Assembly: GCA_964057225.1 (NCBI GenBank)
Contig: OZ059899.1
Coordinates: 12,524,001-12,588,000 of the forward strand
Reading direction: 5' to 3'
Origin: Auanema rhodensis
Lineage: Eukaryota > Animalia > Nematoda
DNA length: 64,000 bases
This document shows, in pieces, positions 12,101 to 41,078 of this stretch. Under the pieces are notes generated by a model. It did no database searches, had not been told where the DNA came from, and saw only the letters and a program-made list of their open reading frames with translations. The first letter of the stretch is position 1; each line of letters starts with the position of its first letter. The position numbers and the translations under genes were made by a program.

Positions 12101-14478
12101 GGCTGAGCTTCAAGCTCTTCGTATCGAGATGGAACGCCGTCTCCAAGAGAAGGTAACAACAAACTTATCAGTTAAACAATCTTCATCCACAATCTTTTCC
12201 AGGAAGAAGAAATGGAATCTCTCCGCAAGAACATGCAATTCGAGATCGACAGACTCACCGCTGCTTTGGCTGATGCTGAGGCTCGCATGAAGGCCGAGAT
12301 CTCTCGTCTGAAGAAGAAATACCAAGCCGAAATCGCCGAACTCGAGATGACCGTCGACAACCTCAACCGTGCCAACATCGAAGCCCAAAAGACCATCAAG
12401 AAGCAATCCGAACAACTCAAGGTTCTCCAAGCTTCCCTCGAAGATACTCAACGTCAACTCCAACAAGTCCTCGACCAATATGCTCTTGCTCAACGCAAGG
12501 TAAGCTCACCATCTAACCTTTTACGTTCAACCTGTTTCCTTTTAAGGTATCTGCTCTCTCCGCCGAACTCGAAGAGGCTAAGACCGCTCTCGACAACGCC
12601 GTACGTGCCCGTAAGCAAGCCGAAGTCGATCTTGAGGAAGCCAACGGACGCATCAACGACCTCCAATCCATCAACAACAACCTTACCGCCATCAAGAACA
12701 AGCTCGAGACTGAACTCTCCACCGCTCAAGCCGATCTCGATGAGGTCACCAAGGAACTCCATGCTGCTGATGAGCGTGCCAACCGTGCTTTGGCCGATGC
12801 TGCTCGCGCCTTGGAACAACTCCACGAGGAACAAGAACACTCCATGAAGATTGATGCTCTTCGCAAGTCCCTCGAAGAACAAGTCAAGCAACTCCAGGTC
12901 CAAATCCAAGAAGCCGAAGCCGCTGCCCTTCTCGGAGGAAAGCGTGTTATTGCCAAGCTCGAGACCCGCATTCGCGATCTCGAAACCGCTTTGGATGAGG
13001 AAACCCGCAGGTAAGCCTTCAATTCATAACTTCATTTCAACTTTCGTGTACTTCCAGACACAAGGAAACCCAGAATGCTCTCCGCAAGAAGGATCGCCGC
13101 ATCAAGGAAGTCCAACAATTGGTCGACGAAGAGCACAAGAACTTCGTTATGGCTCAAGATACTGCCGACCGTCTTCTCGAAAAGCTCAACATTCAAAAGA
13201 GACAGCTTGCCGAAGCCGTATGTTTCAGTAATACCTCAAGACAAGCTAAATCATATATATTCCAGGAAGCCGTTACCATGCAAAACCTTCAACGAGTCAG
13301 ACGGTACCAACACGAGTTGGAGGATGCTGAGGGTCGTGCTGATCAGGCTGAGTCTAGCCTTCACTTGATCCGTGCCAAGCACCGTGGATCCGTTGTCACC
13401 GGAAAGGCTGGTTCAAGCAAGGTCAGTTAGGCATTCGATTCATGCTTCTCTCTATGTTATTTCTCTTTCTTCTGATTCTATCAGCTACTTCTATCTATCT
13501 AGAACATAGTTACAGCATTAATAGCACATAGATGTTATTCCTTACATCACCAGTATCAAAAACTTTTCCTCTTTTCAATCTTTCTCTCTATCCCTTTCAC
13601 CATTTCCTCTATACACATAGAATTAGAATTTCCTTCTAGAAACCTATATAGTAGTCTGAAACGTATACACATTTCTTTGCACGATAACCTTCTTATCAAG
13701 CATATTTCAAGCATTTTTTGCAACTTAATTTCAGGATCTATCCATGTTCTAAACAACTGGATATGTACTACTATATCTCTTTCTCTTAATCGCAGTTATA
13801 CACCGATACATATGTACATCGCTAGTGTATATGATACCATGTTCTCCTATATATCCATTATAGATTTCAATTTTATATGGTAAAATATTATTTATTATAT
13901 AATATATAGTTAACTATACATATATAGTATAATATAGTATAGTATAACCAAAATGTTTTGATTTTCTAATTTATTTTCCAAAATTAAATGATAAAAATCA
14001 AAATTTTATTTAAAAACAACTGGTTTAACTATTAATTTATAAGAAATATTGTTGAAATATCAAATCAGCAACATGTTTTCCAATGTTTTAACTTACCTAG
14101 AAGCCTAACTATCCTTATAGAATAGAAGTAGCTTGATATAGTCTCTAGTCTTAATCCCTTTGTTCTTAAAAAACAAATCACCATAATGATACATATAGTT
14201 ATGATTTGAGTTTAATATAGTTAGTTCTCTTATGTTCTACTTACTCATTCAACTATTAAGTTTTAAAGTTTAAAGTGATCGTCTTAATCTAATGTGATCT
14301 ATGACTTTCGTACTCACCTTCACTCATAAAATCAAATTTTTCAATCACAAACATAGAGAAGAACAATAGCATATTCTTAAAATATTCATATAATTACTAT
14401 AATCACATATGATTTGTCTGCTAACTGTCTATGAGACTTGTCTGCTTTCAGGTTTACGTAATGGAGGACGACTACTAA
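136..14478 (+). CDS. unc-15: Paramyosin (thick-filament coiled-coil core protein), 18 exons
   Basis: Exons 136-258, 352-408, 1066-1152, 1199-1276, 1329-1417, 5319-5397, 7917-7976, 8095-8175, 9226-9330, 11255-11653, 11699-11846, 11893-12008, 12051-12152, 12203-12499, 12547-13010, 13058-13217, 13266-13421, 14452-14478; all GT-AG and in frame. Protein MSLYRSPS...[40 protein letters not shown]...[27 protein letters not shown] is typical nematode paramyosin, with strong C-ending codon bias. Confidence 0.97.
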
Positions 14479-17861: not shown

Positions 17862-19000
17862 TTAAATCAAATATATAGCTAAGAGAATTGCCAGTAAAAT
17901 TTGAAAATTTCGAACAAGATCTCCATTCACATTTGATGTACGGAAATTGCATCCATTATCGGTACAGGAACATACCTAAAATTGCTCAAGATGTTCCTAT
18001 AATTCTTTGCAAAAAATTAAAGAAACAAGTGAAGAAAAAAGATTTCTTCCATGAAAATGTTTGTAAAATAAAACTTAAAACTTACTTTAACTACTTCATT
18101 AGCTTGAACTTGAGGATAGATATCTGACATATGTAACGATACACATAATGGTTCTTTATGTAATACATCAATCTGTAACAAATTAATATTTTTGTTTAAA
18201 GCTTTAAGGTTGTATCTCCAAGTTCTATGATTTAAGGTTCTATCTTCAAGTTCTAAGCTTCAAGCATATGTTTAAATAAAAAATATATTCTTGATAATGA
18301 TAGTTAATATTCAAAATTTTAAGTTTAATTGCTAACAAACCTCACGAGGACGTAATGACATTGATTCAAATATTCTATCAGCACATCCTCTAATGAATAG
18401 AAAAGGCTTGTTAATTGATTGTAAACCTATAATATTCTGATTATATTAGAACTAATAATTAAAATAAAAGTATATAACTATAATCATATAGTTATTATAG
18501 TTAATCAATTGTTTTTACCTCCAAAAAACTGGGGTTCATAGACTGTTATACAGGTACTCATACATGTCTCCATAGGAGCAATTGCTCTAATTGAATCTTC
18601 TGAATCACAAAATCGATCAAAATGTGGTGGAGTTCTGAATATGAAGACGTATGGTTACGATCATAGCCGTAGATATACCTAGCTGTTCTTCCAAAATTTG
18701 AGCTACGTTCTAACAACATGCGATATTCTGCTGAAGCACAAGAGTAGCATCTGAAGAGATTTTATATATTTTATGATTTCAAAGATATTTTTTTTCTTTT
18801 TTTGATCAGATTTTACACATTTTAATGAATTTTATATTGTATCGTGGTATAGTTAAGTTGAAGTTTTCAGACGAAAAACTATGAAACTCCCTAGAATTGT
18901 TTTGTCTGTTTCAATTGACATGCTAGCTACTTTTCAAAGAAAAAAGAACAATCTTTTCTACGTTAAGAAGTTCATCATGAATACAATTCTTTCTTTCTCT

Positions 19001-19053
<53 letters not shown>

Positions 19054-21411
19054 CCCTCCCCTCTCTCTCTCTCTTTCTTTCTCTCTTTCTCTCTCTCTTC
19101 ATTCACCTCCTATTCTCTCTAATCCAACTCTTGCAAGACAATCCATTTATGGGGACGAAAAGAAGAAATACAACCAATAGGCAACCGGATAGCGAGCAAC
19201 CTCATCACATCCATTATCTCATTCCAACTACTTCTATTCGTTGTCATCATCTTACTTATTCTACTTCTCATTCTGCTCCTCCCTCAAGGTCTTCGAACTT
19301 CAATGCTCTCATCGTCTTTCTTTGCTCTCCATCAGCCAATCTCTCTCTCTATCTCTTTCCACTATAAGTTAGGAATAGTATCATTCACTTCTACTCATAT
19401 CCATTCCTTAAAGTCTTCCGTGTTTCAATCGGTCAACTTCTTTCAATCTCCTTTGTCTTTTCAATTCATCCAGCCAATCCAAGCTACAGGATGGATTAGC
19501 AGCACATCTAACGAGAAACTGATGATACAACACAAACGAAAGAATTGAACAGACAAAATGACTCAAAAGGCATTTTGTTCATTTGCAAAGCAAAAAATCA
19601 GCAGAAGTTATCAAACAATGAATTCCCAAAAGATTAAGGTATTCTTCTCTCTAAACACTCCTTATCAATCGGCTCTCTTCCTTCCGTATTTTCTCTCCCT
19701 CTAACTACTCTCTCTCTCTCTGTTACTCTCATACACACACAGAATATATTTTTCTCGTTTAGCCTCTGGCAGAATTTTTTTTTATATTTTTGAACAAAAA
19801 AATAAAATAATTTAACTATTTTCTAAATATTATATCATATATCTATAAAATATAACAGAAAATAGATTATAGTAATATAGTATATCTACATATATTATAA
19901 TAAATAATAATAAAAATTTAAAAAAAAAAAAAAAATAAAATAAGAAATAAATCAAAAATATATAATTAAATAGAATATGATGATAAGATTAAGATTAAAT
20001 GAATATTATTTATATAAAGATCATTAGGTTTCAAACTTGAGAGATCATTGAAGATTACGAAACCCATATTATTACTTCTCAAGAACTATTCATAATTCCA
20101 ATATAATTACATTTTTGATTTAGACCTTTAAAAATGTTTATAATTTATAAATAATATATTCTCATGTGTATAGAAATATGTTCTAAACACGTGAATAATT
20201 ATCATAAAAACTTTAAAAACATGAAAAATATTTCTTTTTTTTTTTAAATTGAAATTCAAGGTTCGGTTGCATTTGCGTGTGTTCGCTCTTTTTCTTTTAT
20301 TTCTTCTTTTTGTTTTATTTTTATTCAGTAACTTCTACTAAACATGATTTATACCAATTACATTATATTTACTCATCTGGAAGAGAAGGATGATACAACA
20401 TCATCTACATCATCTTAGATTTTCGATCAGAAAAAAAAAAGCTAATAGAGCATCTGTGTCAATGTTCTTGTTATCGGCTTATGCTCAATCTCATTCGTTT
20501 TTCTTTTCTTTTATTTTTTTTTTGATTCAGTTCAACAGCGGCAATAGCCCTTCAGTTAGCAACCAAGACACACTACCAGCAGCACCAGCAAAAGCAGAAG
20601 CAGAAGCTATGCAATAGCAGCAAGTTGCTGTAGCAGCAGATTGTTGTGTATTTTTTTTCTTTAAAATAAACAATCATGACTTAATTCTGCTTTTTAGTCA
20701 AATTGATATCTTCAACTGTTGTTAGTGTTCCGATATCATTTGTGAAGATGGTAGACAAGCGAGTCGAGCGGCTGACTAAAGTTAGTGAAGTAACAACTTC
20801 ATTGAATAGCCAGCACATGATGAGAAAAGCTCTACTACTTAGAATTACAACAAATATTGAAATCAACAGAAAGATAATGATAGACCATTCCTAGATGTCT
20901 GGCTCTTGTCTTGACTTCTTGTCCCTCAAAAGGATTTCTTGAAAATGAGAACAATTGATGTCTAATGAACAACTATCATCTCAACCACATTTCAACACAA
21001 AATTTCAATTGAAAGCTTAATCGTGTATGTATTCAGTTGAAAAATCACAAAAAGAATAAGTTCATGTGGTCAAGAACAAAAAAAAAGATGAAAAAGAGCT
21101 TAAGAGTGAAGAGAAAACGAGAGATGAATCGAGAGAGAGGGAGAGAGAGAGAGAATGAGCTATGTATATCGTATATGATTGGGAAAGAAAACGGGAAAAA
21201 AAGAATTAGAAAGCTGAAAAGGAAGCTGGATTTGACTTGAAAAAAAGTTATATAAACCTTAAAACCTTCGTGGGTTTCTTGTTCAAAAGAGAAAAAAAAT
21301 GGAGGAAATGAGAGTTTTCATATGCTACCGCAGGATATCCGTCTAATACAAAATGTAATCTGCTGTTTTGAATTACCGGATTAAAATGGTTCACTAAAGT
21401 ATAAAAGTGAA

Positions 21412-21459
<48 letters not shown>

Positions 21460-21460
21460 A

Positions 21461-21492
<32 letters not shown>

Positions 21493-21840
21493 AAGAGAGA
21501 GAATATACTTTTGCAAGCCAATATAGGTACATAACTCAGACATACAGGAAACCAAACAACAGGCAAGTATGTTCACAAGAACTTTCATTAAAAAGAAAAA
21601 AAATATTTTATGTGATTATTGATTTTTCTTTTTATTTGTAAAATAAATCGATATTTCCATAAAGTTTTTGTCCATAACATTCTTATTGGGACAAAGAATT
21701 TTGAAGAAAAATGAAGGAAAAAGAACGAATATTAGATAGTTTATAAAGAGAAAGGATTTGAAATGTATAAGAAGGAAACAGAGATTATGTAAAGAGTCAA
21801 CAAGTAAGTTGAATGAAATAGAGAGAGAAATGGACGTTAA

Positions 21841-21897
<57 letters not shown>

Positions 21898-22284
21898 GAG
21901 AGAGAGAGAATGAATGAATATGAGAGGTGAAAAAAGAAATGATTTGTTTATAAAAACCGAAAAGAAGATGACAAAAGTATGGATAATGTGTAAGAAATGA
22001 ATAACTATTTGTAATATAATTTGATGGAAAAGCTGTGAAAAACGAAGTTTTTCTGCCGTTTAATCGCTTGTAAACTGCTAGTTGATTGAGTAAAAGAGTC
22101 TGTTGTGTTTTGAAGATTTGATCTTGTTAGCTACGACTATCATCAGATTCACACGTCAGATCAAATGAAATGGCATAGCTCATACTCACACTACATATGC
22201 ATACATATAGTTAAAATGTACAAACCTGAGAGCTTGAACGGCTGGCTGATAGAGGAATACAAGTATTAGATGCCAAAGAAACAT
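17862..22284 (-). CDS. HOT/ODR-2 family Ly-6-related, predicted GPI-anchored protein
   Basis: Minus-strand exons 22226-22284, 18679-18750, 18519-18634, 18341-18426, 18086-18172, 17862-17975 give MFLWHLILVFLYQPAVQALRCYSCASAEYRMLLERSSNFGRTARTPPHFDRFCDSEDSIRAIAPMETCMSTCITVYEPQFFGGLQSINKPFLFIRGCADRIFESMSLRPREIDVLHKEPLCVSLHMSDIYPQVQANEVVKVCSCTDNGCNFRTSNVNGDLVRNFQILLAILLAIYLI*. It has a signal peptide, 10 Cys, the CYSC...RGC...CSCxxxxCN pattern and a hydrophobic tail. Confidence 0.9.
21411..21502. repeat. Interrupted (GA)n microsatellite
   Basis: Seen directly; abuts the candidate alternative exon donor. Confidence 0.95.
21509..21588 (-). CDS. Candidate alternative first coding exon of the HOT/Ly-6 gene
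   Basis: ATG...MKVLVNILACCLVSCMSELCTYIGLQ plus AA|gtatat donor. Phase 2, so it joins exon 18679-18750 in frame as ...GLQKCYSC. Confidence 0.45.
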
Positions 22285-22425
22285 ATTACTCCTACGAAAA
22301 GGCTGTAGAAGACGTTTGGATGAGCCCGAAATTCAATTCTGAAGACGTAAATGAAGGGACGTGACGTCGTCTGATTATCCTCTACGATGAGGAGTTCTTA
22401 TAGCTGTGAGAGAGAGAAAGATAGA

Positions 22426-22456
<31 letters not shown>

Positions 22457-23057
22457 GGAGGAGGAGGAATAACGTGCCAGAATCTGTATTATTGATATAA
22501 GATGTGAGAAATTGTATGAAACTAGGTAATTGAATGCAGTGAAGACGTTCAACGAGCACGTTGAAGCGTGAGCTGGCTGGGCGGAGTCAGAGAGTTTGGA
22601 GCGACTGCAGACTATTTCAAGACGGTGAAAATACCAAGTCCCGCCTTCTGGGTCTCTCTATATTCTATCTTTCTCCCTTTCCTAGCTTCATGCAGTATGT
22701 GTCTATGTGTCTAGACTCTCTCAGCTTGCAATGCTCTATGCGATATCTCTAGCTTCTCGTTCACTTACATCTCTATCTATTGCTCTCTTTCTTTCTTTTC
22801 TCTCTCTCTCTCTCTCTCTCTCTCCCTCTCTCTTTCTCGCTCTCTTTTTCTTTCTCTCTTGTTCTTTTTCTAATTCTCATTCTCCCAACAAGCTCATCCT
22901 TGTTACTATCTATTTCAATCTTCCCCTTCTTCGTTTAAGAAGGAAAAGGCTCTGAATGAGAGACAAAAGCTCAGTTTGGCCTACAGACTCGATGAAGTGT
23001 GTGTGTGTGTGTGTGTTTAGGATGTAAGAAACAAGTAGAAGAAGATGGAAGATGAGG

Positions 23058-23276
23058 TTAGAAGACGACGAAAGAGTCTGAATTGAAAACTTTCACATCT
23101 GGATCTGTTTCCGTTCCATCATCTAATAGAAGCATCTTCAACAAACCTTCTCGTTCATAGAGAATTTCCGAACAATTTTCCTGACCGTTTACACATATCT
23201 TTTCCATCGGAATACAACACGTGTGGATTATATTCCATTTGTATAATATCATTGAAATTATACGATCACAAAGCAT
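23058..23276 (-). CDS. Putative small single-exon protein (72 aa), unknown function
   Basis: MLCDRIISMILYKWNIIHTCCIPMEKICVNGQENCSEILYEREGLLKMLLLDDGTETDPDVKVFNSDSFVVF*. Non-repetitive, with an AG acceptor (ttatatag) 7 nt before the ATG. No family recognised. Confidence 0.35.
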   Translation of the reverse strand: MLCDRIISMILYKWNIIHTCCIPMEKICVNGQENCSEILYEREGLLKMLLLDDGTETDPDVKVFNSDSFVVF

Positions 23277-24280
23277 AGTTAATCTATATAATAGCATAAA
23301 TCTTATTTTCAGTAAAAACGAAGAAGGAAATAATTTTTTTCGAACAAAAAATACTGAGCGTATCCTTACAACTTGATTACAACATTGAAACATGAAGAAC
23401 TTTTTCTAAAATATTTGTATAAGAATGAATTTCATAGTTGAATTTCCAGTATATGCTATATATGTACTAGAAATATAAGCATAATATACATATAATGATG
23501 ATGATATGTATATATTCAAGATACAAAAATTTATTTTTCTTTCAAGAGAACTATGAATGAAGTTGCTTAAAAGCTTCAAGCTTATTATGTTCATCTGAAT
23601 AAACTTTATATTAATAGCATCCGGATGATGATGATGACGATGTGAACGTGTAGTTAGTATAGTATAAACTATGTAAGAATTTTCTAAAAGAACAATACTA
23701 ATACTGTATATTTCATAAGAAGGTTAACGAATTTAAGTCAATATAACAAATTTATTAACAATTTTGGACTCAGACTCTTTATTTTAAAAAAAATTAAAAA
23801 TTCCAAAAAAAAACTTTTTTTGGTATAAATAAATGTTTTTTATATGTACATAATATATATTTGTTCTAACTGTTTCTTCTAAAACATTTTTTTTCAAAAC
23901 AAACTTGAAATATTTGAATGAAACACCTGTTAACTATGGATTAATGATTAGCTAGTCCACTCTTTACAATAGCTAATCTTCACAAATTCATACTTCAGTC
24001 TAAATTAAGTTTTAAATTTTAATATTTGTAGTTTCTTAGTTCATTATATATAATGACTTCATACGTCTTATTATGTTTTCTTTCAAAAAATAAAATGTTG
24101 ATGGTGTTTTGTACCATAAACATTCTTTTCAATTTTCGTGTCGAGCAACATCTAAGAGACCAAAAAAACTATTTTCATACACAACGGTGATTCGCTAATC
24201 AGATACAGAGTTATAAGCATGTGAAGAAGAAAAACCAGAACAAAAAAAAAGATAAATTGTCGAATATCTTGACTTGAGAC

Positions 24281-24617
24281 CTCTCTATATAATATTCATC
24301 TTGACTGCACCGTATATCGTATAGGTTACCTTTTTTTTTCTTGTTTTTACCAGTTTTCAAATCTCTCTATATAATATTCATCTTGACTTCACCGTATATC
24401 GTATAGGTTACCTTTTTTTTTCTAGTTTTTACCAGTTTTCAAATCTCTCTATATAACATTTATCTTGACTTCACCGTATATCGTATAGGTTACCTTTTTT
24501 TTTCTAGTTTTTACCAGTTTTCAAATCTCTCTATATAACATTTATCTTGACTTCACCGTATATCGTATAGGTTACCTTTTTTTTTCTAGTTTTTACCAGT
24601 TTTCAAATCTCTCTATA
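24281..24617. repeat. 82-bp tandem repeat, 4 full copies plus a partial copy
   Basis: Unit ctctctatataaYattYatcttgactKcaccgtatatcgtataggttacctttttttttctWgtttttaccagttttcaaat starts at 24281, 24363, 24445, 24527 and (partial) 24609. Confidence 0.95.
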
Positions 24618-25051
24618 ATATTTAGAATATTGAAATTAAATATTTTTTCATTTAAACATATAACATGATTGTAAAACTTTATATAATTATTTCTTTGAAA
24701 TATGAAAAACAACCGCATCGCACATATGCAACGAAATAAATGAAAAATCACGTAATTCACGTGACTTCGTCTTGTAGAACTACATTGCAAACCCATCTCA
24801 TATACCGTACCATGGGGAAACTAATAATAATTTGAACTTTTCGTAAATAATACGGGGTGAAGGGCATGAAAAAATAAATATGTACAAAAATAATGAATAT
24901 AGTACCCGAGGATATACAAATATATGAAATTTTTCAATTCTAATATACAGATAACTGGAACATGGCGAGTTACAGAAGACCCGAAGGCCTTTTTGAGAAT
25001 CATGAATGCATTTCTTAGCCTATAAGTTAAGTGTACAGCGCATCACACAAC

Positions 25052-28000
25052 TTATTTCTTATTTCGAATTCCCAACAAACTTGCTAATGAATATTCCGTA
25101 ACTATGCTAGCTATACTTTCCAATGGCCTATGCGCATCCCTTAAATCAGGCTTTGCTTATATGCGTCAAGTTAATAAGAATAGTTTACCTGATTTTCGGC
25201 ACAATATTTAAAATGAACTTTTCAACTGTATCCACTCCACCAGATCCACCAGATCCACCAGAACCACCACCAGTTTGACCTCTGAAGCCTCGGTTCTCCT
25301 GTCCAGGTACCCAGTTAGGTGGTGGAGGCTTAGGCAATGGTAAGCCGGAATCTTCAAAAAGAAATTATATGGTTACATGCTAATGAAGCTTATTCGTGCC
25401 TTTGATGAATCGTATCGTGAAACCAGTTTCGTAATCCAAAATAGTTGGATCAGTGAAGATTAAGATTTCGGATTGATCAGATGTGACGGTGTATTCTTGT
25501 TCAGGACAGCTGAAACCATATAGTTAAGAAATTGTATTTCAATTTTGGCGTCTTTAGTGAAGCTCACGCTTCAACGTGCTCTTTGAGCCTCTTCACAGCG
25601 ATATAGTAGTAACAACATACCATACACGGAATCCTGTCTGTTGGAAATCAGAATTATGCTTAATCTCAACATATGCTTTACAAGTTGATTCACAACGATA
25701 TGTTACATTACTTAATATAAACTTGATTCGAGCGTTATCAGTCTGTAATCCAAGAAAATGTTTCACTTTATAGTACAAAAATCATTATTGAATAACCTTA
25801 ATTCGCCAATAGCAACGTTTCTTTCCACGATGTGCAAGCTCTTGCCACATTGGTGCTGCAAGAAGATCACCACCACAAGCACCTTCACCTGAATCAAGAT
25901 AACAATGTAGATGAGAAGGAAAAATTGTTTTAGAAAAAGAAAAAATTCTTTCGTCTTCTTCTCGAAGAAGCAAGGAAAAGAAAAATTGATTACTTTGAGG
26001 TACAGCATCGCAGTGAATTCCACCTAAACCTGGAGGGCATTTGCATCTCCTGCAGTTATTTGGATCTGGATATCCACCATTTCTACATTTCAGAGCATTC
26101 TTTGGACAAACATCTGAATAACAATGAAATTCATAGATTTCATGCTTTCATTTCAAACCAACCATTACAGTATAGACGATTAACTTGTTTCACATCAATG
26201 AATGATGGTTGTACACGTTGTCCAATAGTTCTTTGATAGTTCTTATCTCTTGTTTGAATTGTGATTTCATCCCAATCTTTAGTGAAAGCCTGTTAAATTA
26301 AATTTTAAACTTTAAAGCATATGTTCAGCTAAGGTTGTATACCGATGGGCCATAATGCATAACACTTCCAAGATCATATGGTAGACCCATGTCTTCAATC
26401 TCATCTTTCGTACGTCGCTCAAAGTTTCCGTTAGTTCCCTTGATAATCCAATCTTTTCTATAAAATGTTTTGTTGAAATTAGATGAAAGCTAAAGCATTG
26501 TGAATGAAGTACTTTATATAGATGTAGTCGTCACGATCTGGACGTGATTGTTCATGCCAGAACCCAAGAGAATGACCAACTTCATGAGTCACAATACCTT
26601 TCTAAACATTTTCAATTGATTATTGACTGATTGATCATCATCAAACTCACGTCTTCACAACCATAGCCGATAGAGATGAGTTGAGAGCCTCCTGTACGTC
26701 CAACACTGGAATAGCAGCCACCACCGCGGAAAAACACGACGTAATCCTTGCCAGCAGCATTTTCTTTCCAGCGGACACATGTTTCACTTTCCCAGTGGTT
26801 AAGAGCTGACTGGATGAGTTTCTTCCATTTATCTTCAAATTATTTTGTTGAATGAAGTTGGTATCATATGCTGTATACCATCTCCTCCCTTGAATCTATA
26901 AGGAATTGGTCCTTTTGGCCAACGATAGACAGAACCAGTGATGACTTTACGCTTTCCACGTCGTAAGCCTCCGCGACGAACTTGCTCAGCAGCCATTATA
27001 ACTCTAAGAAATATGATTATTTAGAAAGAAATAATAGATAAACTGATGATGTTACCCTTGCATTTGATCCATTGTTAGAACCATATCACTTTCGAATAGC
27101 TTATTCGTTAATGGCCGATTAGCTCCAAGTTCAGTTCCATCATATTGAGGAGAAAGCAACTGTGGAGAATCCTGAAGCACATACCTAACTAGAAAGAAAC
27201 ATACAGAGAGACTTACGAATGCTGGTGCTCCAACACTTGAAACTTGATTAGGTGGAGCCATTGCTTCAAAGAAATGTTCCATCAATGATTGAACAGCAGA
27301 ATAATCGTGTTGGCCTCTATGACTATCCGAAAATGAAACAATTTCTCTGATCATCTACAAAGAAATTCTCAATTTTATTCAAAAGTTCTAAGTTAAACTT
27401 ACGCTTGCAGCATTATGCGCTAATAGTTTGTTGTCACCTTTAGGAACATATGGTGCCAATGTTGGTCCTGGCAAATGGGGTGCAGCTATAGTTGGTGGAG
27501 GAAGTGTTGGGAAAAACGTTGGAAAAGTTGGAAATACAGCTGGTGTAGGAGCTGGTGGAGGTGCATGCTGGACAACGAATGGCTGTATTGGAGCATACTG
27601 GACAGGTGCTACTGGAGCCATACTGTACGGAAGAGCAGGAGCACCTTGTTGCTGCTGGTACATATACATCGATGGAGCATCCTGAGCAACAAACTGTTGC
27701 TGTTGTTGTTGTGGATAAACAACAGGCTGAATATGTTGACTGAAATGAAAATATCTAAATCTAAACAAACAGAGGAAAGTTGACAGTTATAGGATGAAAA
27801 TTATTTTTGTAACAACTTTTAAGCTTGAAAATATTTATTTTTTACAAAAAAAAATGGTAGAATATAAGAAATATGTAATTAGATTCTTTCTAATTCTAAA
27901 AAATATTTTAAAATTTTTAGACATTGCGACCATTTTTCTAATTTTTTTGCTTCTTTTTTAAAGAATTTTTATAAAAAAAAAACAAAAAATAAGAGGAATT

Positions 28001-31000
28001 CTCTAAAATCATTACTACTTCATTAGTCAAAAAATAAATTAATAAAGCTACATATTATGTTTTTTCAAACTTTTCTCTTAACTTTATCTGAAAATTCAGT
28101 TGAAGTTATGACTAGACTAACCCTATTGGTGGTCCGGTTGCGTCATTGCGAACCCAGGTCCGAGCATTAGGTCGATGATAGATAGGATTAGGAGCATTTG
28201 GTACACTTCCTATAATGATATTAATAAAATTTAATAAAATATTAATTCCAAAAATTGACTAAATTTTTTTATTTTTAGCCAATTTTTGTAATTAAAGTTG
28301 TAAAATAAGCGCGAAAGTTGTTTCATCAAGCTGGTCAGCAATACTAACACCATCTATACTACAGTGTTTTGCGAAGATGAACATTCGCAAACTATAAGAT
28401 AATAATGCAAAATAGAGCTTCTTTTCACTTTGTTTCAACTATGATTTGAATATGCTATAGCTTATGCTAGGGCTCTTACCACTACAGCATAGTTAGGCTC
28501 AAGTTGGTCAATCAAAACATAGATTGTAATTCAAGTGTAATAATGCTCATAAAATATTTGAAATTATGGTATATGTTATATAAAGGAACTACTAAATACA
28601 ACTTCGTGGCCTACGTCCGATGGCTTGAGGAGCGTCGATGTTTTCGGCAATAACAGATGGACCAGCACTAGCTACACGGCGAGGGTTACGTGGTACCGCT
28701 TTAGCACCTGTCAATCTCAGATCAATGTTATCGTCATAATAATCTGCAAAAATGAATATGAATATGAGTAAGAATTCTATGAATCTCATGAATTACCTGA
28801 GTTTTCTTCGAGCCATGTTAGCGTGTCAGGAGGCTTAGGAGCAGCTGGCTTGTGCTTAGCCTGGAATAACCTCACTACCACTATCAATATCATATTATGA
28901 AAAAAAATTTTAATTTATTTACGATTTGAAAAAAAGCATTAGCAGCTTGAGCGTTAAGTTCTATTCAAGTTTAAAGAAAAAATTATTTTTTGAAGTTGTT
29001 GAGTTGTTGTGTTGAAGTTGAATTGATGTTGGATGTTATCTAATAGACTACGGTATACCTTATCTACTTTGTATTTTGATAAATCTGATGATGGAATGAG
29101 ATGATCTTCAACGTCTGTGTATCTTTGTCGATTAGCCTGAAACTCTTAAATGGTCCCAGCAAGAAAAAAAAATATTAGTGAAAGGATGGATGTGTAGAAG
29201 GATAGAATGGTATAGAAACTTAAAACACACAAATGAATAACTACAAGAAGCAAGTAGCAAGAGACGAAGCAGCAGATTTGAATTTTCTTTTGGAATTTTG
29301 CCAAAATTAATAAAAATTAATTGTTTAATGGAATACCGCCGCATTTGAACGACGTTGCTGTTGCTTCTGATTCTGCTTATTACGTCTTGCACGCTCACGT
29401 TGACGTTTCAATTGAGCTTTACGTTGCTGTTCTTGTCGTTTGAGATCTGGTAAAGCCTGTAAAGCATTTACAACTGTTTGATGGCAGGCTATTGTCTAGA
29501 CAGTTAATTGACTTTAGAAGATTCTGTTTCAAGTAATTCGTATGCAATATAAATTTCAAAAAGATAGAAGAAGATAAGATACAGAGAAAGCTTGGAGAAA
29601 GGGAAAAAGTCATAAAATAAAAACCTTAGCCAGAGGCTCATCGTAGTCAGATGCATCAGGAACTGGAGGTACGCCTGGAGCTGGTTGAGGAATATGTGGT
29701 CCTTGATTAGCCCCACGACCACGATTTCCGCGATTGCCACCGTGATTACCACCGTGATTGCCATTTGGCTTCCATGGCTTCTGGGTTGGCGCTGGAGTTT
29801 GAGGTGGCTGTTTCTACAAACAAAATGGTTTTTATCTAATATGGTATATGTGTATATTCTATTTACATTCAATAATCCGGCTCCTAGATTGAATAAATCT
29901 CCAAATGGCAGATTAGATCCAGGTCCCGCATTGTTATTACCTATTCCGGACAGCAGTGCCTATAAAATTTAGTGAATTGAGAGCATTTTTGTGTTAATCT
30001 TCTATCAAGCCAAATATCTTTGATGCTACGTAATTCTAATCCTCCTCCCTACCCTGTCGTCTAACCTTCTTTGTCTATGTCATTAAGCCCCCCCCCCCTG
30101 AACTACCACTTGAATAGAATCAATTACCGTACCGCTATTCCGCCGCCTCCTGGAGAACCGCCACCTGCACCTCCACCTAGACCACCAAGTCCGCCTCCTG
30201 CTCCTCCTGCACTTCCGAGACCACTGCCAAGGAATGGTGCTATTAGTGACATAAAATCTTGGGCCTATAAACAGATATAGTTAAAAGCTAGCTATGTTGT
30301 ATGAAATAAAACATAAAATCAGGTTTGAATGTGTGATGTAAGCGATATTATCTGGTGTTGTGATGTCATCATCAATCAAATTTCCCGTTATTTTATCTTT
30401 TAAGGATGAGTCAGCGAACGCTTGTTCATACTCACGCAGCTTCATCTTTTTCCCGTTTTTCCTTTTTATTTATTTTTTTTGCAAATTCTCTCACATTTCC
30501 ATATAATAAGTTAAAATATTGAATTCAAGCATAAGGTATATCAAGATGTGACCTTTCCAATTCAACTGAACGCTTCTCCCCTTTCTTACCTGTCTCACTT
30601 GATTTCATGCTTCTCACAATCATGAACCATACTCTTCTTCTCATTCTCTTTTGCTTAAGTATCTGCCAGGGGAGAAGTTTTGTACTATTAGGTTGTCAAG
30701 ATTTTCAGTTTTTGTCTCTGAGTTTCCAAAAAAAAAAACGATTAGCGCATCTTCGTTTTGCAACACATCATCTTCATTTATTTCTCGTTCTACTCTCATG
30801 TCTCATTCAGCTTCAAATATCCCAGTTTTCTCTCCTGTTGTTGTGTCCTTGAAAGGCTATACCCCTGAGGCAATCTCACATTCTAACTGGTGAACGAACA
30901 GGTATGGCGTTTCAATCTCATTCTCACACATCAACAAGAGAATGTGTTTAAGATGAAATACATACCAGCAAAAATCAAATTAACGTCATCTTGTAACTTT

Positions 31001-31518
31001 AATTCAAACTTGAAACCAGCATAGGTTTAAAATGATTTTCTATCATGAGTTTTATATATTTAAAAGATGAAAAACATGAAAAATCATCTATATATGGAAA
31101 GATATACTCGTTTTTCAAACATCTACATATGTTGTAAACAGCTAAAGAAGCAGCAAATATAAGCTGCCAACCAGTTTTGCACAGTGAAATGCCCTCAATG
31201 CTTATCCTTACTACCCTTTTTCCTCTTCTCTCTCTATTTCAGTCTCTCTCAACAGCTTTTTTTACCTCTTTCTTTATCTTTGAACATAATAAAAGTGCTT
31301 TTGAAATTAATTTCTTTAGCTTTTCTCTTCTTATTTCCATCTCTTCTAGCTCACTAACATCAAAATACTAATTCCAAGAGAATTAAATGAAAGGAAAATT
31401 TGAAAATCTTGGAAAATCGCGAAATCAAAGTTCAAAAAGATCAAAAAATGGATTTCTTCTCAATGTTTACCTGTGCATAGTTGATGACCAGAAGTAGGAT
31501 TAGACTATGCCACTTCAT
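25052..31518 (-). CDS. nas-30: Astacin-family zinc metalloprotease (NAS-30-like): signal peptide, long low-complexity pro-region, astacin, EGF, CUB-like
   Basis: 23 minus-strand exons from 31471-31518 ([16 protein letters not shown]) to 25052-25139 ([28 protein letters not shown]). Furin-type site RGKR|[10 protein letters not shown]; zinc motif [19 protein letters not shown] (26513-26601); Met-turn SVMHY (26343-26457); [29 protein letters not shown] (25994-26113). The tail [19 protein letters not shown]...[21 protein letters not shown] resembles C. elegans NAS-30 as I recall it; the symbol is less certain than the family. Confidence 0.9.
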
Positions 31519-36722: not shown

Positions 36723-38000
36723 ATGTATCGTGGACAGTCTGATCGAGGTGGTCGCGGGGGTGGTGGAGAATTCAGAGGTCGCGGAGGTGGTGGAGAATTC
36801 AGAGGTCGAGGAGCTGGTGGCGGAGGATTCAGAGGTCGAGGAGCTGGTGGCGGAGGATTCAGAGGTCGAGGAGGCGGCCCTGGTGGTCGCGGAGCACCTG
36901 GCGTAAGTTCTTTGCTGTTACCATTTCTGAGATTAGACATATTGGAGCATAAGGCTTTTATTTATAATTATGCAAATATATAATTAATAATATTAAAATT
37001 CTTATTATTATTAGATGTAGGTAGAGAAATTAATTGCTTTTGTTTCAGTCTTCTTTTAGTGCTGAAGATGCTCATTCAGAGGTATGGATATGCTCATTAA
37101 TTCAAGTTTTAAACTCCAATGTTTCAGCTTTTCATTGATCTTACTCAGCTTAACTTGAAACTTAACAAAGATCAATCTGATAGTATATTCGCACCTCGTA
37201 AACCATCTGCTAGCCGTCAAGGCGTAAAAGTAAGTTTTATAATAAACAAAGATACACATGTTGTGATATTTGACCAAACAATGCTAATGATTTTCAGCAA
37301 GTTATGCTTTTAACTAATGCTTATGAAGTTGAAGTAGCGCCATCTAACTTTTATTTATATGATGTTCGCTTCGTAACCTATTTAGAAGATGGAACTGAAG
37401 CCGAATTAATCCGTGACAATTATGATGAGTAAGTTGTTCAAGTTGTTCAAGTTGTAAACAAATAAGTTTTTTTCTTTTTCAGTCATTGTACTCGTGAACT
37501 TTATGAAGCTCGTTTTTCTTTGTTAATGAAGTTCTTCAATGATAATGGCTTATGTGATCAAGGAAAATCATTTGCTTATGATGGAAACAAGCTGCTATAT
37601 ACGTACAAAGATATAACGCCTGTACTTCCACAGGTAAAACTAACAGCCTTTTCTTAGTTCAAACTTAAAACTTTAATTTTTATATTACAGAAAGGACGTT
37701 ATGTAATTCCCATTGAAGACATTCCTAAAGATATTCGTCCATATATTCGTATTCCCAAATTAAGAACGCTCGAGATTATACTTAATAAATGTGATGGAAA
37801 TCATATCATTAAATCAACTGGCTATAAGGAGGCTCAAGTATGTTTTTATTATTTTAATGATTATGACTCAAATCTATATTAAGACTTCTGGAAATTTCAA
37901 AAATTTGGATTCATCTCATAGTCAGGCCATAGAGGTGATCACTAGCATGCAGGCGGGATCAAGGTACGCGATATTTCACGCATTTAAAATAATTTCTCTT

Positions 38001-38057
<57 letters not shown>

Positions 38058-41000
38058 ATATCTATCTATCTCTCTCTCTTTCTTAACACATTTTCGAATT
38101 TTCAGTGGAAAGTATGTTTCATTTGGAAATGGAGTACTTTATCCAAAAAATCAAAATTATCAGAAAACGGACTGTATGCAAGTTAAATATGAAGGAATAA
38201 CTAAATCACTCAGGTGTTTCCTTTTCACTGTTTCTGAAATATAATGAATTCTTCAGATATGTTGAAGGAAAAAATCGTGATCGTGTGCAGCCTGTTCTTC
38301 TCATCGATGGTTTGTCTATATCTTAGCAGATACAAGTGTTCTTAATTTCGATGCTTCAGCTCGTATGGGACAATTCTATGATTATGCTCCTGTTCTGAGC
38401 TTTGTCAACTATCTTGCCAGCAGAAAATTCCGTGTTCCAAATATTAGTGGAGGAATTCCTCCAGATATTGCAAGAAGAATTTCTGCCTACCTTAAAGGCC
38501 TTCGTCTAGAGGCAAAAGAAAAGAAACTCACATTCACTAGTCGTGGTTTTACAAAAGAATCAGTTGCGGAGATCATAGTTAACGTTAACACGTGAGTTTG
38601 TTCTTTATCCAGCTTATTTCAGCATGTTTGTACACTATTATAGACCCACAGGAAAGATTGAAAAGAAACTTCCTGAGTTATATCAGGGACTTCGAATTAA
38701 CACGAAGCTTCCAGCAGTTATGTCAGCAAGGGAGAAGAATGGGTAAGTTGCTTTATAGCTTTTCAAATGACATATGGATGATTGTTTTCAGAGGTTTTGT
38801 TCCTTTCAAGAATGTTATGGAAGATTTATATATTGCTCCACATCAGCGTGTTAAAAATCAAAAACATCAATTGGCTCCACCTGTATGTTTTCCGATTTTC
38901 AAGATTTTTTTTCAAACTTCTGTATTTTTAGCCTCGAGCTGATAGGGTTCAACAGCGACATGACAAAACCGAAAAATTGAGAGCTGATCTAGGACTTGAT
39001 GGAAGTTCAAATACTGTCTTGGATAGGTTTGACAACATATTGATTATACATCAAAGTAACAACGTACTATTTCAGTTTCCAACTTAAAGTTGCAAGAAAG
39101 CCTATGCTTGTACAAGCTTTCTACAGACAGAATCCTCAAATTCTTTATGGAAACGGCAAAATTTGTTATGCTGGTGATAACGTAAGTTCAGAACAAGTTG
39201 CTGTTTTCTCATATGCTGTTTTAAAGGGATCATGGCAATCGCGTGAGAAATTCGTCCTTCCAGCTGAAGGATTCAGAGTAGTTTGTATTGTATTAGCACA
39301 TAATGACGATGTTGATAGTAATATTCAGTAATATTTCCAGTTATTAAAGGAACTAATTTTGAATTTTAGTAAATTCGGTCAAGACTTCAAAATGGAAATG
39401 AAACGTCGTGGTTGTAACAATAGCTTTACTGATTTCCAGGTGCGCAAAGTAACTGCCGCTGGGATAGAAAAGGTAAGTTAGTAGATTCACAAAGCGTTAA
39501 AGAATATTGAAAATTGCTGATATCAATGAATATTATAGGAATTTGAAAAGATTGCTTCAGAAGGAAAGAAGACGTTAGTTTACCTTATAAGTGATCGTGA
39601 AGATGGACATAGTAGGAGAAGATTTCATGTTTTCGATTAGTTATCAAGCATTTTCAGCTGAATTAAAGTTCTTGGAACGAAAATATTCACTTCCGACACA
39701 GCACTTAATGTTGTCAACTATTTTTCCATCGACTAAACCGTAAGATTTATTCATATAAACAACTTGTCTAAACAATGTTTATTTCAGTCGAACTCTTTCA
39801 AATATTTGTTTCAAAGCGAATCTCAAAACAGGTGGACTTAACCATTTGGTACTTCCTGATGCTATCAGGTAATTAGATGAAGGAAGTTCATTTAATAGAA
39901 ATAATCTATTTTCAGTGAGAAATATTGGATTTCTAGTGGAAAGACACTTGTTGTTTCATTTGTTTCCAATAGAGGTAGAAGCTCTAAAGATGTCGTAGGA
40001 AATACCCCAACAGTTATTGGCGTACGTTCTCACATCATGTTATTCGTTAATTTTTTAAATTTTATTTTACAGTTTTCTTACAATTCTGCTAAGCATCCTG
40101 AGAACTTCATTGGCGATTTTCATTTCCATGATCCTTCTGAAGAACAGGTTTTACAACCTATAAGTCTTATCTCATCTGTTCAATAAGTTTAGATCAGTGC
40201 TGATATCATTGATATTCGCATGAAGCATATTCTCAAGCTTTTCCATTCGAACCGTAAAGCTCTTCCTGAAAATATTATTATTCTTCGGGATGGAATTGTG
40301 GAAACTCAATATTATCAGGCAAGCTAAATCTATCAGATCAAGCTTTAATGGCTGTGTTTATTCTATAGGCTGTAACGCATGAGCTTGCTCAAATCCGAAA
40401 TACATGCACATCGTATGGAACGCTTGTCAACTCACCGAAATGGAAGCCGAAGTTCCAGATGGCCGTCGTTACGAAGCGGCACAATTTAAGATTTTACCGC
40501 TACAGAGAGCGCTCACAATCTGTTCCATCGCGTTATGGCGGTGCTGAAGTTGAAAATCTCAACATTGCTGCTGTGATAGATTGTCAGATTGTTAGACCAA
40601 ATCTGACCGAGTTCTACATGCAAGCACATCACATCATCCAGGTAAACTACACAGTATGAACTTATTAGCAATTTGGATGAATTTCAGGGTTCAGGAAAGG
40701 TGCCATTGTATACAATTCTGGTAGATGAGCTTAATTGTACTATGGATCAAATTCAATCATTCATGCTTGGTCTCTGTTTCAGTCATCAGGTTTGAATTCA
40801 TCGTCTTACAATCCAGTAGCTTTTACCCATATTCTAGATCACTGAACAACCTATCTCTCTTCCGGAACCAGTGTATCAAGCTGAAGAATGGGCAAAACGT
40901 GGTGTAGCTATGTATTCTCAATTCAGGTAATAATGAAGTTTGAATATGTTATATAACTATATTAAAATATTTCAGAGATACATATGGCTATGAGCTTTAT

Positions 41001-41078
41001 CATAATGAGTTTGAAAAACTTACAAAGGAAATGTCATACATGAATACGAGGCTGGAAACATACCGAGTTAACGCTTAA
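36723..41078 (+). CDS. Worm-specific Argonaute (WAGO), CSR-1-clade-like, RGG N-terminus, predicted non-slicer; 26 exons
   Basis: Exons run from 36723-36902 (RGG repeats) to 40976-41078 (...RLETYRVNA*) in frame. Motifs: LLTNAY, FAYDGNKLLY, GITKSLRYVEG, APHQRV, LKFLERKYSLPTQH, NICFKANLKTGGLNH, PTVIGFSYNSAKHPENFIGDF, IIILRDG, VVTKRHNLRF, EFYMQAH, PISLPEPVYQAEEWAKRG and the WAGO-type C-terminal RVNA. Confidence 0.95.

What the first reader, a model, noticed from the sequence alone, without database searches (positions are those of the whole stretch)
36723..41078. CSR-1-like Argonaute that has apparently lost slicer activity
Seen: the reading frame is intact over 26 exons. The first catalytic position reads KTLVVSFVSNRG (Val where GYD/SYD-type Asp is expected; exon 39916-40021). 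The Glu-finger region (PSEEQ) and RDG are retained, and the last position is YQAEEWAKRG (Glu for Asp/His). Recalled knowledge: the EPVYQADEWAKRG-type and HPExFIGD-type motifs are characteristic of the CSR-1/C04F12.1 (VSRA-1) branch of WAGOs, and CSR-1 is the slicing WAGO. The PAZ region looks compact and divergent. Inference: a lineage-specific, non-slicing CSR-1 paralogue with an RGG tail, which may define an undescribed 22G-RNA pathway. This is the best candidate for a new system in the window.
Basis: partly seen in the sequence, partly recalled or inferred. Interest (0 to 1): 0.72.

Follow-up and report, generated by a model that had tools for sequence, protein, structure and literature searches.

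The report
Slicer-dead VSRA-1-type worm Argonaute gene
This is a real, expressed 26-exon nematode Argonaute gene of the C04F12.1/VSRA-1 (CSR-1-related) family that has lost the first catalytic aspartate, as has its counterpart in Auanema sp. JU1783, so it most likely binds small RNAs without cutting targets, as most worm-specific Argonautes do.

Summary
A 26-exon gene on the + strand (36723-41078) encodes a 973-aa Argonaute. It has an RGG-rich first exon and the catalytic positions read V699 / E742 / D776 / E926. Spliced RNA contigs from four runs of one study match it without mismatch and confirm the introns; they corrected one exon boundary.

- The gene belongs to the slicer-type WAGO branch. 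The nearest named C. elegans protein I could retrieve is C04F12.1/VSRA-1, not CSR-1. All other relatives retrieved read D-E-D-D with PEPxYQADEWAKRG.
- It is not a species-specific paralogue. It is the positional orthologue of an Auanema sp. JU1783 gene that reads V/Q/E/K, so the loss of the first Asp predates the split of the two species.
- It evolves about ten times faster than its neighbours: 47% amino-acid identity against 85-97%.
- It is still constrained. Both frames are intact, dN is about 0.5 while dS is saturated, and the MID 5'-end pocket is kept.

Most likely it is a non-cleaving, 22G-RNA-guided WAGO. Non-slicing WAGOs are the rule and the VSRA-1 subfamily is known to evolve fast, so no new pathway is implied.

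Main gap: C. elegans CSR-1, WAGO-1, HRDE-1 and NRDE-3 could not be fetched for the tree. Whether the genome also holds an intact paralogue was not tested.

The parts
36723..41078 (+). Whole coding region of the Argonaute gene: 26 exons, 973 codons plus stop. Exons: 36723-36902, 37049-37081, 37128-37229, 37298-37428, 37483-37633, 37691-37837, 37884-37963, 38106-38213, 38257-38309, 38360-38591, 38644-38742, 38792-38882, 38932-39026, 39076-39181, 39227-39327, 39370-39472, 39539-39611, 39658-39739, 39788-39868, 39916-40021, 40073-40147, 40193-40318, 40369-40641, 40688-40789, 40838-40926, 40976-41078.
   Evidence: Manual and scripted model. GT..AG joints in spliced RNA contigs of 4 runs with 0 mismatches. 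End-to-end alignment to P0001.
36723..36902 (+). Exon 1: N-terminal RGG/RG-rich tract (aa 1-60, 12 RG dipeptides), built from about four tandem 30-nt units.
   Evidence: The Auanema orthologue also has an RG-rich N-terminus; the Caenorhabditis VSRA-1 proteins do not.
37128..38309 (+). Exons 3-9: N domain and linker L1.
   Evidence: Weak Pfam ArgoN hits on exons 4 and 5. Alignment to P0001 and family members.
38360..38882 (+). Exons 10-12: PAZ-equivalent region (aa about 329-469), divergent.
   Evidence: Position in the alignment to family members whose whole proteins carry Pfam PAZ. No PAZ hit on exon 10 alone.
39370..39868 (+). Exons 16-19: MID domain and start of PIWI. The guide 5'-end pocket residues H628, K632, T642-Q643, K665 and K669 are kept.
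   Evidence: Family-invariant H..LK..E..TQ and K.N.K.GG columns. Correspondence to AGO2 Y529/K533/Q545/K566/K570 through. Codons.
39916..40021 (+). Exon 20: first catalytic motif, ...KTLVVSFVSNRG... . V699 (39962-39964, GTT) stands where relatives have the Asp of G-Y-D-V-x-H-P.
40073..40147 (+). Exon 21: FIGD motif and glutamate finger; E742 (40142-40144) is kept.
40193..40318 (+). Exon 22: RDG motif; D776 (40289-40291) is kept. The following intron 22 (40319-40368) has a GC donor.
   Evidence: RNA contig pieces 40191-40316 and 40367-40638.
40369..40641 (+). Exon 23: central PIWI (KRH...). This was the query for the exhaustive protein search.
   Evidence: Pfam Piwi E 1.2e-07. phmmer against 1.84 billion representatives.
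40838..40926 (+). Exon 25: ...SLPEPVYQAEEWAKRG... . E926 (40883-40885, GAA) stands where relatives have Asp and AGO2 has His807.

Best explanation
The gene encodes an expressed, fast-evolving, catalytically inactive member of the C04F12.1/VSRA-1-type WAGO family, the sister group of CSR-1. It comes from a rhabditid close to Auanema.

Shown:
- The gene is intact and is spliced into mRNA.
- It is the positional orthologue of Auanema sp. JU1783 CAI4225813.1.
- Both orthologues lack the first catalytic Asp. Every other retrieved relative from nematode clades III, IV and V keeps a D-E-D-D tetrad.
- The residues of the guide 5'-end pocket and 80% of the family's near-invariant residues are kept.
- The residues that were lost cluster around the active site.

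Inferred:
- The protein still loads RdRP-made 5'-triphosphate 22G-type small RNAs and finds complementary transcripts, but cannot cleave them. It would act by binding and by recruiting partners, as the non-slicing WAGOs do.
- The RGG tract in exon 1 probably serves as an arginine-methylation, Tudor-protein or germ-granule handle, as proposed for CSR-1a.
- Loss of Asp1 came first, before the two species split. It relaxed selection on the remaining catalytic residues, which then drifted: D to E here, and Q/E/K in Auanema.
For: Gene model and expression:
- 973-codon open frame over 26 exons.
- Spliced contigs of 2934-2974 nt in four runs, with no differing letters and GT..AG joints.

Family assignment:
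- The exhaustive phmmer search with exon 23 gave Auanema P0001 as best hit (55% over the exon). The remaining hits were strongylid, ascarid, Mesorhabditis and Steinernema proteins of one family.
- The whole model aligns end to end with P0001 at 46-47% identity.
- Word searches from P0001 and from its C. remanei hit lead to C. elegans C04F12.1/VSRA-1, NP_492573.1.
- In the trees, MODEL+Auanema has 100/100 support. It sits inside the rhabditine C04F12.1-type clade (86/90), next to Caenorhabditis VSRA-1 (90/83). An AU test disfavours a strongylid-sister placement (p 0.022).
- C. bovis P0070 and C. briggsae CBG03703 both lie just downstream of hsr-9, which ties the slower-evolving members to VSRA-1 by position.

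Tetrad and constraint:
- The window and the Auanema contig L001 are collinear. Ly-6-related and astacin exons are 85-97% identical, the Argonaute 47%.
- The Auanema gene has 27 exons with nearly the same structure.
- dN is 0.48-0.51 and dS is saturated.
- 52 of 65 near-invariant family residues are kept.

Literature:
- C04F12.1 is closely related to CSR-1 and more widely kept across clades III-V (PMC4288196, PMC3110158).
- The VSRA-1 subfamily has the lowest conservation, variable copy number and pseudogene alleles in Caenorhabditis (PMC12152482).
- VSRA-1 binds 22G-RNAs (PMC10101689).
Against: - C. elegans CSR-1, WAGO-1, HRDE-1 and NRDE-3 could not be retrieved. The tree therefore cannot separate 'VSRA-1 orthologue' from 'CSR-1 orthologue', and cannot formally exclude other WAGO clades.
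- The grouping with Caenorhabditis VSRA-1 joins two long branches and may be partly long-branch attraction. Support is moderate and not starred.
- There is no synteny with the Caenorhabditis vsra-1 locus; no hsr-9 is seen in the window.
- Small-RNA binding, loss of cleavage, and the tissue and stage of expression are all inferred, not measured.
- The four RNA runs come from one study. They are labelled RNA only by the tool's guess, although spliced contigs can hardly be DNA.
- Pfam does not detect the PAZ domain, so 3'-end binding is not assured.
Confidence: 0.72

Rival explanations
1. It is this lineage's true CSR-1 orthologue, the single essential germline 'licensing' Argonaute, and it has lost slicing. 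CSR-1 functions would then run without cleavage in the Auanema group.
For: - It has an RGG-rich first exon, like CSR-1a (PMC8421154).
- It belongs to the CSR-1/C04F12.1 super-branch.
- CSR-1 itself was not in my tree, so this is not excluded.
- Notes on this genome list no CSR-1 so far, though that coverage is partial.
Against: - All retrieved relatives read D at site 4, as VSRA-1 does, while CSR-1 is DEDH (PMC8421154).
- E926 (GAA) is one step from Asp and two from His.
- Searches starting from the Auanema orthologue reach VSRA-1-family proteins in Caenorhabditis.
- CSR-1 is a conserved, mostly single-copy gene, whereas this gene evolves very fast, as VSRA-1 does (PMC12152482).
Confidence: 0.13
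2. It is a decaying gene, a transcribed pseudogene in the making, whose function was lost together with the catalytic site.
For: - It evolves about ten times faster than its neighbours.
- 13 of 65 family-invariant residues are lost.
- VSRA-1 pseudogene alleles are common in Caenorhabditis populations (PMC12152482).
Against: - Two orthologues, diverged to saturation at silent sites, both keep open frames of more than 940 codons across 26-27 exons with conserved splice structure.
- dN of about 0.5 is far below the saturated dS.
- The MID pocket and most PIWI core residues are kept.
- The mRNA is present and fully spliced.
Confidence: 0.06
3. It still slices, using a non-canonical set of acidic residues: E742, D776 and E926, plus another residue in place of Asp1.
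For: Three of the four positions are acidic in the window protein. Glu at site 4 is a conservative change from Asp.
Against: - No acidic residue lies at or next to site 1 (…VVSFVSNRG…).
- From established knowledge, not tested here: mutating the first Asp alone (D597A) inactivates human AGO2.
- The orthologue has lost all four positions (V/Q/E/K), which argues that catalysis is no longer under selection in this lineage.
Confidence: 0.04

Closest known systems
C. elegans C04F12.1 / VSRA-1 (NP_492573.1; P0042) and its orthologues across nematode clades III-V
   Same: - It is the nearest named relative retrieved.
- Both share the family motifs (…FIGD…, …PEPxYQA[D/E]EWAKRG…, the H-x3-K MID pocket), the overall length and the domain order.
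- The subfamily is fast-evolving.
- The trees place the window protein inside the rhabditine part of this family.
   Different: - VSRA-1 and all other relatives read D-E-D-D. The window protein reads V-E-D-E and its Auanema orthologue V-Q-E-K.
- The window protein has an RGG-rich N-terminal exon that Caenorhabditis VSRA-1 lacks.
- There is no synteny with the hsr-9/vsra-1 locus.
C. elegans CSR-1 (F20D12.1), the slicing, essential germline WAGO
   Same: It belongs to the same super-branch according to the literature (PMC4288196). Like CSR-1a, it has an RGG/RG-rich tract encoded by the first exon (PMC8421154).
   Different: - CSR-1 has DEDH and cleaves (PMC8421154). Here Asp1 is missing, and site 4 derives from Asp rather than His.
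- CSR-1 is conserved and mostly single-copy, while this gene is very fast-evolving.
Auanema sp. JU1783 CAI4225813.1 (P0001), an unnamed protein product
   Same: It is the positional orthologue. The flanking Ly-6-related and astacin genes are the same and the exon structure is nearly the same. It also has an RG-rich N-terminus and Val at catalytic site 1.
   Different: Identity is only 47%. The Auanema protein has also lost sites 2-4 (Q/E/K). It has one extra intron.
Non-slicing WAGOs of C. elegans (WAGO-1, HRDE-1, NRDE-3 and others)
   Same: The predicted mode of action is the same: 22G-RNA-guided binding without cleavage, with effects exerted through partner proteins (established knowledge; PMC10101689).
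   Different: These belong to different WAGO subfamilies according to the literature. None appeared among the hits of the exhaustive exon search. They could not be placed in my tree.

Membership tests
Eukaryotic Argonaute (N-PAZ-MID-PIWI) | PIWI (RNase H-like) domain | tested here: met
   Pfam Piwi on exons 22, 23, 24 and 25; exon 23 alone scores E 1.2e-07, above the curated cut-off. The orthologue aligns to human AGO2 residues 395-814 with E 1.9e-24.
Eukaryotic Argonaute (N-PAZ-MID-PIWI) | N, PAZ and MID domains in the canonical order | tested here: inconclusive
   ArgoN hits on exons 4 and 5 are weak. No PAZ hit on exon 10 alone. The end-to-end alignment to full-length family members, some of which carry Pfam PAZ, suggests the architecture is complete. 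The joined protein was not scanned.
Eukaryotic Argonaute (N-PAZ-MID-PIWI) | Guide 5'-end binding pocket in MID | tested here: met
   H628, K632, Q643, K665 and K669 occupy the family-invariant columns that correspond to AGO2 Y529, K533, Q545, K566 and K570.
Slicer-competent Argonaute | Complete DEDD/H catalytic tetrad | tested here: not met
   V699 / E742 / D776 / E926; Asp1 is absent under both gapped and ungapped alignments.
C04F12.1 / VSRA-1 orthogroup of WAGOs | Groups with VSRA-1 and its positional orthologues in searches and trees | tested here: met
   (clade support 86/90 and 90/83; moderate, and long branches are involved). The tree lacks CSR-1 and the other WAGO clades.
C04F12.1 / VSRA-1 orthogroup of WAGOs | Family sequence motifs (FIGD…PRxE, RDGVSEGQ, SLPEPxYQADEWAKRG) | tested here: met
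   The motifs are present in recognisable but eroded form: FIGDFHFHDPSEE, RDGIVETQ and SLPEPVYQAEEWAKRG.
C04F12.1 / VSRA-1 orthogroup of WAGOs | D-E-D-D tetrad, kept in nearly all full-length members retrieved (the C. remanei paralogues P0047/P0052 read Glu at site 4, and C. sp. 36 P0039 reads His there) | tested here: not met
   The loss is shared with the Auanema orthologue.
C04F12.1 / VSRA-1 orthogroup of WAGOs | Genomic position next to hsr-9, as in C. briggsae and C. bovis | tested here: not met
   tblastx of the Caenorhabditis loci against the window matches only the Argonaute itself. Synteny is not expected to survive at this evolutionary distance, so this weighs little.
C04F12.1 / VSRA-1 orthogroup of WAGOs | Binds 22G-RNAs | not testable with these tools
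   This needs immunoprecipitation followed by small-RNA sequencing.
CSR-1 proper | DEDH tetrad and slicer activity | tested here: not met
   The DEDH state is taken from PMC8421154. The window protein reads V/E/D/E, and site 4 derives from Asp in all relatives.
CSR-1 proper | Clusters with C. elegans CSR-1 in a phylogeny | not tested
   No CSR-1 sequence could be fetched.
CSR-1 proper | RGG/RG-rich N-terminal exon (CSR-1a isoform) | tested here: met
   12 RG dipeptides in the 60 aa of exon 1. This is a resemblance only; RG tracts occur in several Argonautes.

The most novel reading that the evidence does not exclude
In the Auanema lineage the only CSR-1/VSRA-1-type Argonaute may have become a non-cutting protein. 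The slicer-dependent jobs of this branch, such as tuning germline mRNAs, clearing maternal transcripts and triggering 22G-RNA synthesis, would then be done without cleavage or by another Argonaute. That would be a natural experiment on what slicing is needed for in the licensing-type pathway, in a genus with unusual three-sexed reproduction.
Probability: 0.1. Interest if true: 0.6.

Novelty: new member of a known kind. Interest (0 to 1): 0.3.

Why it matters
The CSR-1/C04F12.1 branch is the one group of worm-specific Argonautes that generally keeps a working cutting site. Here is a natural, expressed and still-constrained member that lost this site before two species split. It offers a modest but clean comparative case for asking which functions of this branch need cleavage. 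It also shows how the other catalytic residues decay once the first is gone. It does not point to a new kind of system: non-cutting WAGOs are the norm, and the VSRA-1 subfamily is already known to evolve fast and turn over.

Tried and rejected
1. An automatic splice-site dynamic-programming model merged introns and was discarded in favour of a hand-curated model. My first guess for intron 15 (30 nt, 39311-39340) was wrong. The RNA contigs show 39328-39369.
2. Three word-based protein searches never returned C. elegans CSR-1, WAGO-1, HRDE-1 or NRDE-3. The profile search mostly added plant and fungal AGOs, which I used as outgroups.
3. I tried to label Caenorhabditis sp. 36 P0039 (DEDH) as CSR-1 by synteny. 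Its neighbours gave no recognisable csr-1 neighbourhood, so its identity stays open.
4. The look-up of the C. elegans vsra-1 locus returned only a transcript contig. I used C. briggsae instead.
5. Supplementary Table 1 of the Ascaris paper, as machine-read, contradicts the paper's main text on AsWAGO-3. I did not rely on the table.
6. The 30-letter loose end at 36989 is not found in the window, so the idea of an alternative first exon inside the window is dropped.
7. Pairwise dN/dS could not be estimated because dS is saturated.
8. Pfam on long ORFs elsewhere in the window gave only a myosin-tail-like coiled coil.

Left out by rule: the joined (spliced) protein was never sent to any search, family-scan or structure tool. 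Only single exons were sent, by reference. The joined sequence was used only in local scripts for alignment, trees and dN. As a result there was no whole-protein database search, Pfam scan or structure prediction of the window's own protein.
Full report
**What is there**

The region 36723-41078 (+) holds a nematode-style gene of 26 short exons separated by introns of 42-146 nt. I read the sequence and built the model by hand and by script. It encodes 973 aa with no internal stop.

Scanned exon by exon by reference, Pfam finds Piwi on exons 22-25. Exon 23 alone scores E 1.2e-07, above the curated cut-off. ArgoN hits on exons 4-5 are weak.

Exon 1 encodes 60 aa with 12 RG dipeptides and is built from about four tandem 30-nt units. 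Intron 22 has a GC donor.

**Expression and model check**

One search for sequencing runs found four runs of one 2019 study, all from the same coded organism, holding about 46% of the stretch's sampled words. That share is what exon-only sequence would give.

Laid on the window, each run contributes one contig of 2934-2974 nt. The contigs skip every intron at GT..AG and show no differing letter. Contigs in which all introns are removed can hardly be DNA, so the gene is transcribed and correctly spliced.

The contigs corrected my intron 15 to 39328-39369. Exon 15 is therefore 39227-39327 and exon 16 is 39370-39472.

The contigs do not reach the 5' part of the repetitive exon 1. Two runs have a contig that starts matching at 36989 inside intron 1, after 255 unrelated letters. 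The adjoining 30-mer is not in the window, and this remains unexplained.

**Catalytic positions**

The closest relative is P0001 (Auanema sp. JU1783, CAI4225813.1, 945 aa). HMMER aligned it to human AGO2 as D597<->V673, E637<->Q716, D669<->E750 and H807<->K900.

The window protein aligns to P0001 without gaps at these motifs: KTLVVSFVSNRG against KTLVISYVLHRG, and so on. This gives V699, E742, D776 and E926. The codons are GTT at 39962-39964 and GAA at 40883-40885.

In the multiple alignment the family's invariant G-Y-D-V-x-H-P Asp falls on a one-residue gap in both species. Either way there is no Asp.

**Relatives**

- An exhaustive phmmer search of exon 23 against 1.84 billion representatives gave only 26 hits. 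P0001 was first at 55% identity. The rest were fragments and full-length proteins from strongylids, Toxocara, Mesorhabditis and Steinernema.
- Word searches from P0001 and from its C. remanei hit led to C. elegans C04F12.1/VSRA-1, NP_492573.1, 'Versatile Small RNAs Argonaute'.
- In a local alignment, nearly all retrieved full-length relatives read D-E-D-D with the motif PEPxYQADEWAKRG. These came from clade III (Toxocara, Syphacia), clade IV (Steinernema, Meloidogyne, Globodera, Heterodera schachtii) and clade V (strongylids, Mesorhabditis, Diploscapter, Caenorhabditis VSRA-1).
- The exceptions are two C. remanei paralogues with Glu at site 4, Heterodera trifolii P0055, and Caenorhabditis sp. 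36 P0039, which reads DEDH.
- C. bovis P0070 and C. briggsae CBG03703 both lie immediately downstream of hsr-9 on the same strand. The slowly evolving C. bovis protein is therefore the positional VSRA-1 orthologue, and the whole group is best called the C04F12.1/VSRA-1 orthogroup.
- This fits the literature. C04F12.1 is 'closely related to CSR-1' and more widely kept in clades III-V than CSR-1 (PMC4288196; table in PMC3110158). CSR-1 is DEDH (PMC8421154).

**Trees**

In a quick tree and a careful tree, the window protein and P0001 pair at 100/100. They sit inside the rhabditine part of the family (86/90) as sister to the Caenorhabditis VSRA-1 clade (90/83).

Forcing them to the strongylids costs 14.4 log-likelihood units (AU p 0.022). 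Long branches meet here, so the exact sister group is uncertain.

The tree therefore cannot formally separate a VSRA-1 orthologue from a CSR-1 orthologue.

Indirect evidence favours VSRA-1:
- The ancestral Asp at site 4. E926 (GAA) is one step from Asp and two from His.
- The search paths from the Auanema orthologue.
- The fast rate of evolution.

**Orthology and rate**

The Auanema contig around P0001 (L001) is collinear with the window. A Ly-6-related gene matches window 17.9-22.3 kb and an astacin gene matches window 25.06-31.2 kb, with exon matches of 85-97% amino-acid identity. The Argonaute follows at 47%.

The Auanema gene has 27 exons with almost the same structure. The two genes are therefore positional orthologues. 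The source organism is a rhabditid fairly close to Auanema sp. JU1783, and the Argonaute evolves roughly ten times faster than its neighbours.

Pairwise dN is 0.48-0.51 and dS is saturated. Silent sites are randomised, yet both frames stay open for more than 940 codons.

Of 65 columns that are (near-)invariant in 18 intact relatives, 52 are kept in each of the two proteins; other family members keep 82-100%. The 19 columns changed in at least one of the two proteins cluster around the active site: the GYDVxHP motif, RDGVSEGQ, KR, and site 4. The MID pocket (H628, K632, Q643, K665, K669) is intact.

This is the pattern of a functional protein that has given up catalysis, not of a pseudogene. 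Because Val at site 1 is shared, that loss predates the split of the two species. Sites 2-4 then drifted independently: E/D/E here and Q/E/K in Auanema.

**Mechanism (inferred)**

By analogy with VSRA-1 and the other WAGOs (PMC10101689), the protein should load RdRP-made 22G-type RNAs and bind complementary transcripts without cutting them. It would act through partner proteins.

The RGG exon is a plausible site of arginine methylation and of Tudor-protein or germ-granule interaction, as discussed for CSR-1a (PMC8421154). None of this was measured.

**Comparison and novelty**

The gene is a new, catalytically dead member of a known family. Three facts argue against a 'new system':
- Non-slicing WAGOs are the rule.
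- The VSRA-1 subfamily is already described as the least conserved Argonaute subfamily in Caenorhabditis, with variable copy number and segregating pseudogene alleles (PMC12152482).
- An annotated, though unnamed, orthologue exists in a public Auanema assembly.

The point of modest interest is that a branch otherwise faithful to its tetrad across three nematode clades lost it here while the gene stayed under constraint.

**Earlier notes of this scan**

Notes on the same genome list several other Argonaute-like genes and none described as CSR-1. They were not tested here and did not change my reading.

The joined protein was never sent to a remote search, family scan or fold tool. Exons were sent singly by reference. 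The joined sequence was used only in local scripts. A whole-protein search, a whole-protein Pfam scan and a structure model of the window's own protein were therefore left out.

Noticed in passing
window 36989 (inside intron 1, 36903-37048): Contigs of runs X2 and X4 begin to match at 36989 after 255 unrelated letters, and the adjoining 30-mer is absent from the window. This could be an alternative 5' exon located elsewhere (an isoform without the RGG exon, as with CSR-1a/b) or a chimeric contig.
   Followed up: partly
window 40319-40368: Intron 22 has a GC-AG boundary instead of GT-AG. The spliced RNA contigs show it is removed.
   Followed up: yes
window 37995-38083: A (TC)n microsatellite of about 89 nt lies inside intron 7. 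The reads tool skipped it as a repeat.
   Followed up: no
window 17900-31200 (- strand): A Ly-6-related gene and an astacin metalloprotease gene lie upstream. They are collinear with Auanema sp. JU1783 contig CALQYR020007279.1 at 85-97% amino-acid identity per exon match. This identifies the source as a close relative of that species.
   Followed up: partly
window 11180-12844 (+): Long ORFs here give myosin-tail-type coiled-coil Pfam hits (E 2.7e-11). They probably belong to a myosin heavy chain or paramyosin-like gene.
   Followed up: no
L001 10001-13994 (Auanema sp. JU1783): The orthologue has 27 exons, with one extra intron splitting the equivalent of window exon 10. It has lost all four catalytic positions (V/Q/E/K).
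   Followed up: yes
P0047 and P0052 (C. remanei CRE_15396 and GCK72_025643); P0055 (Heterodera trifolii): These family members also show eroded active-site motifs: the two C. remanei proteins have Glu at site 4 and read RDEIS, and P0055 reads RNG. Partial loss of the tetrad has therefore happened more than once in this branch.
   Followed up: no
PMC8837657, main text versus Supplementary Table 1: The main text says AsCSR-1 and AsWAGO-3 keep the tetrad. The machine-read table row for AsWAGO-3 reads 'NO (S/T/G/S)'. The stored table is probably misaligned.
   Followed up: partly
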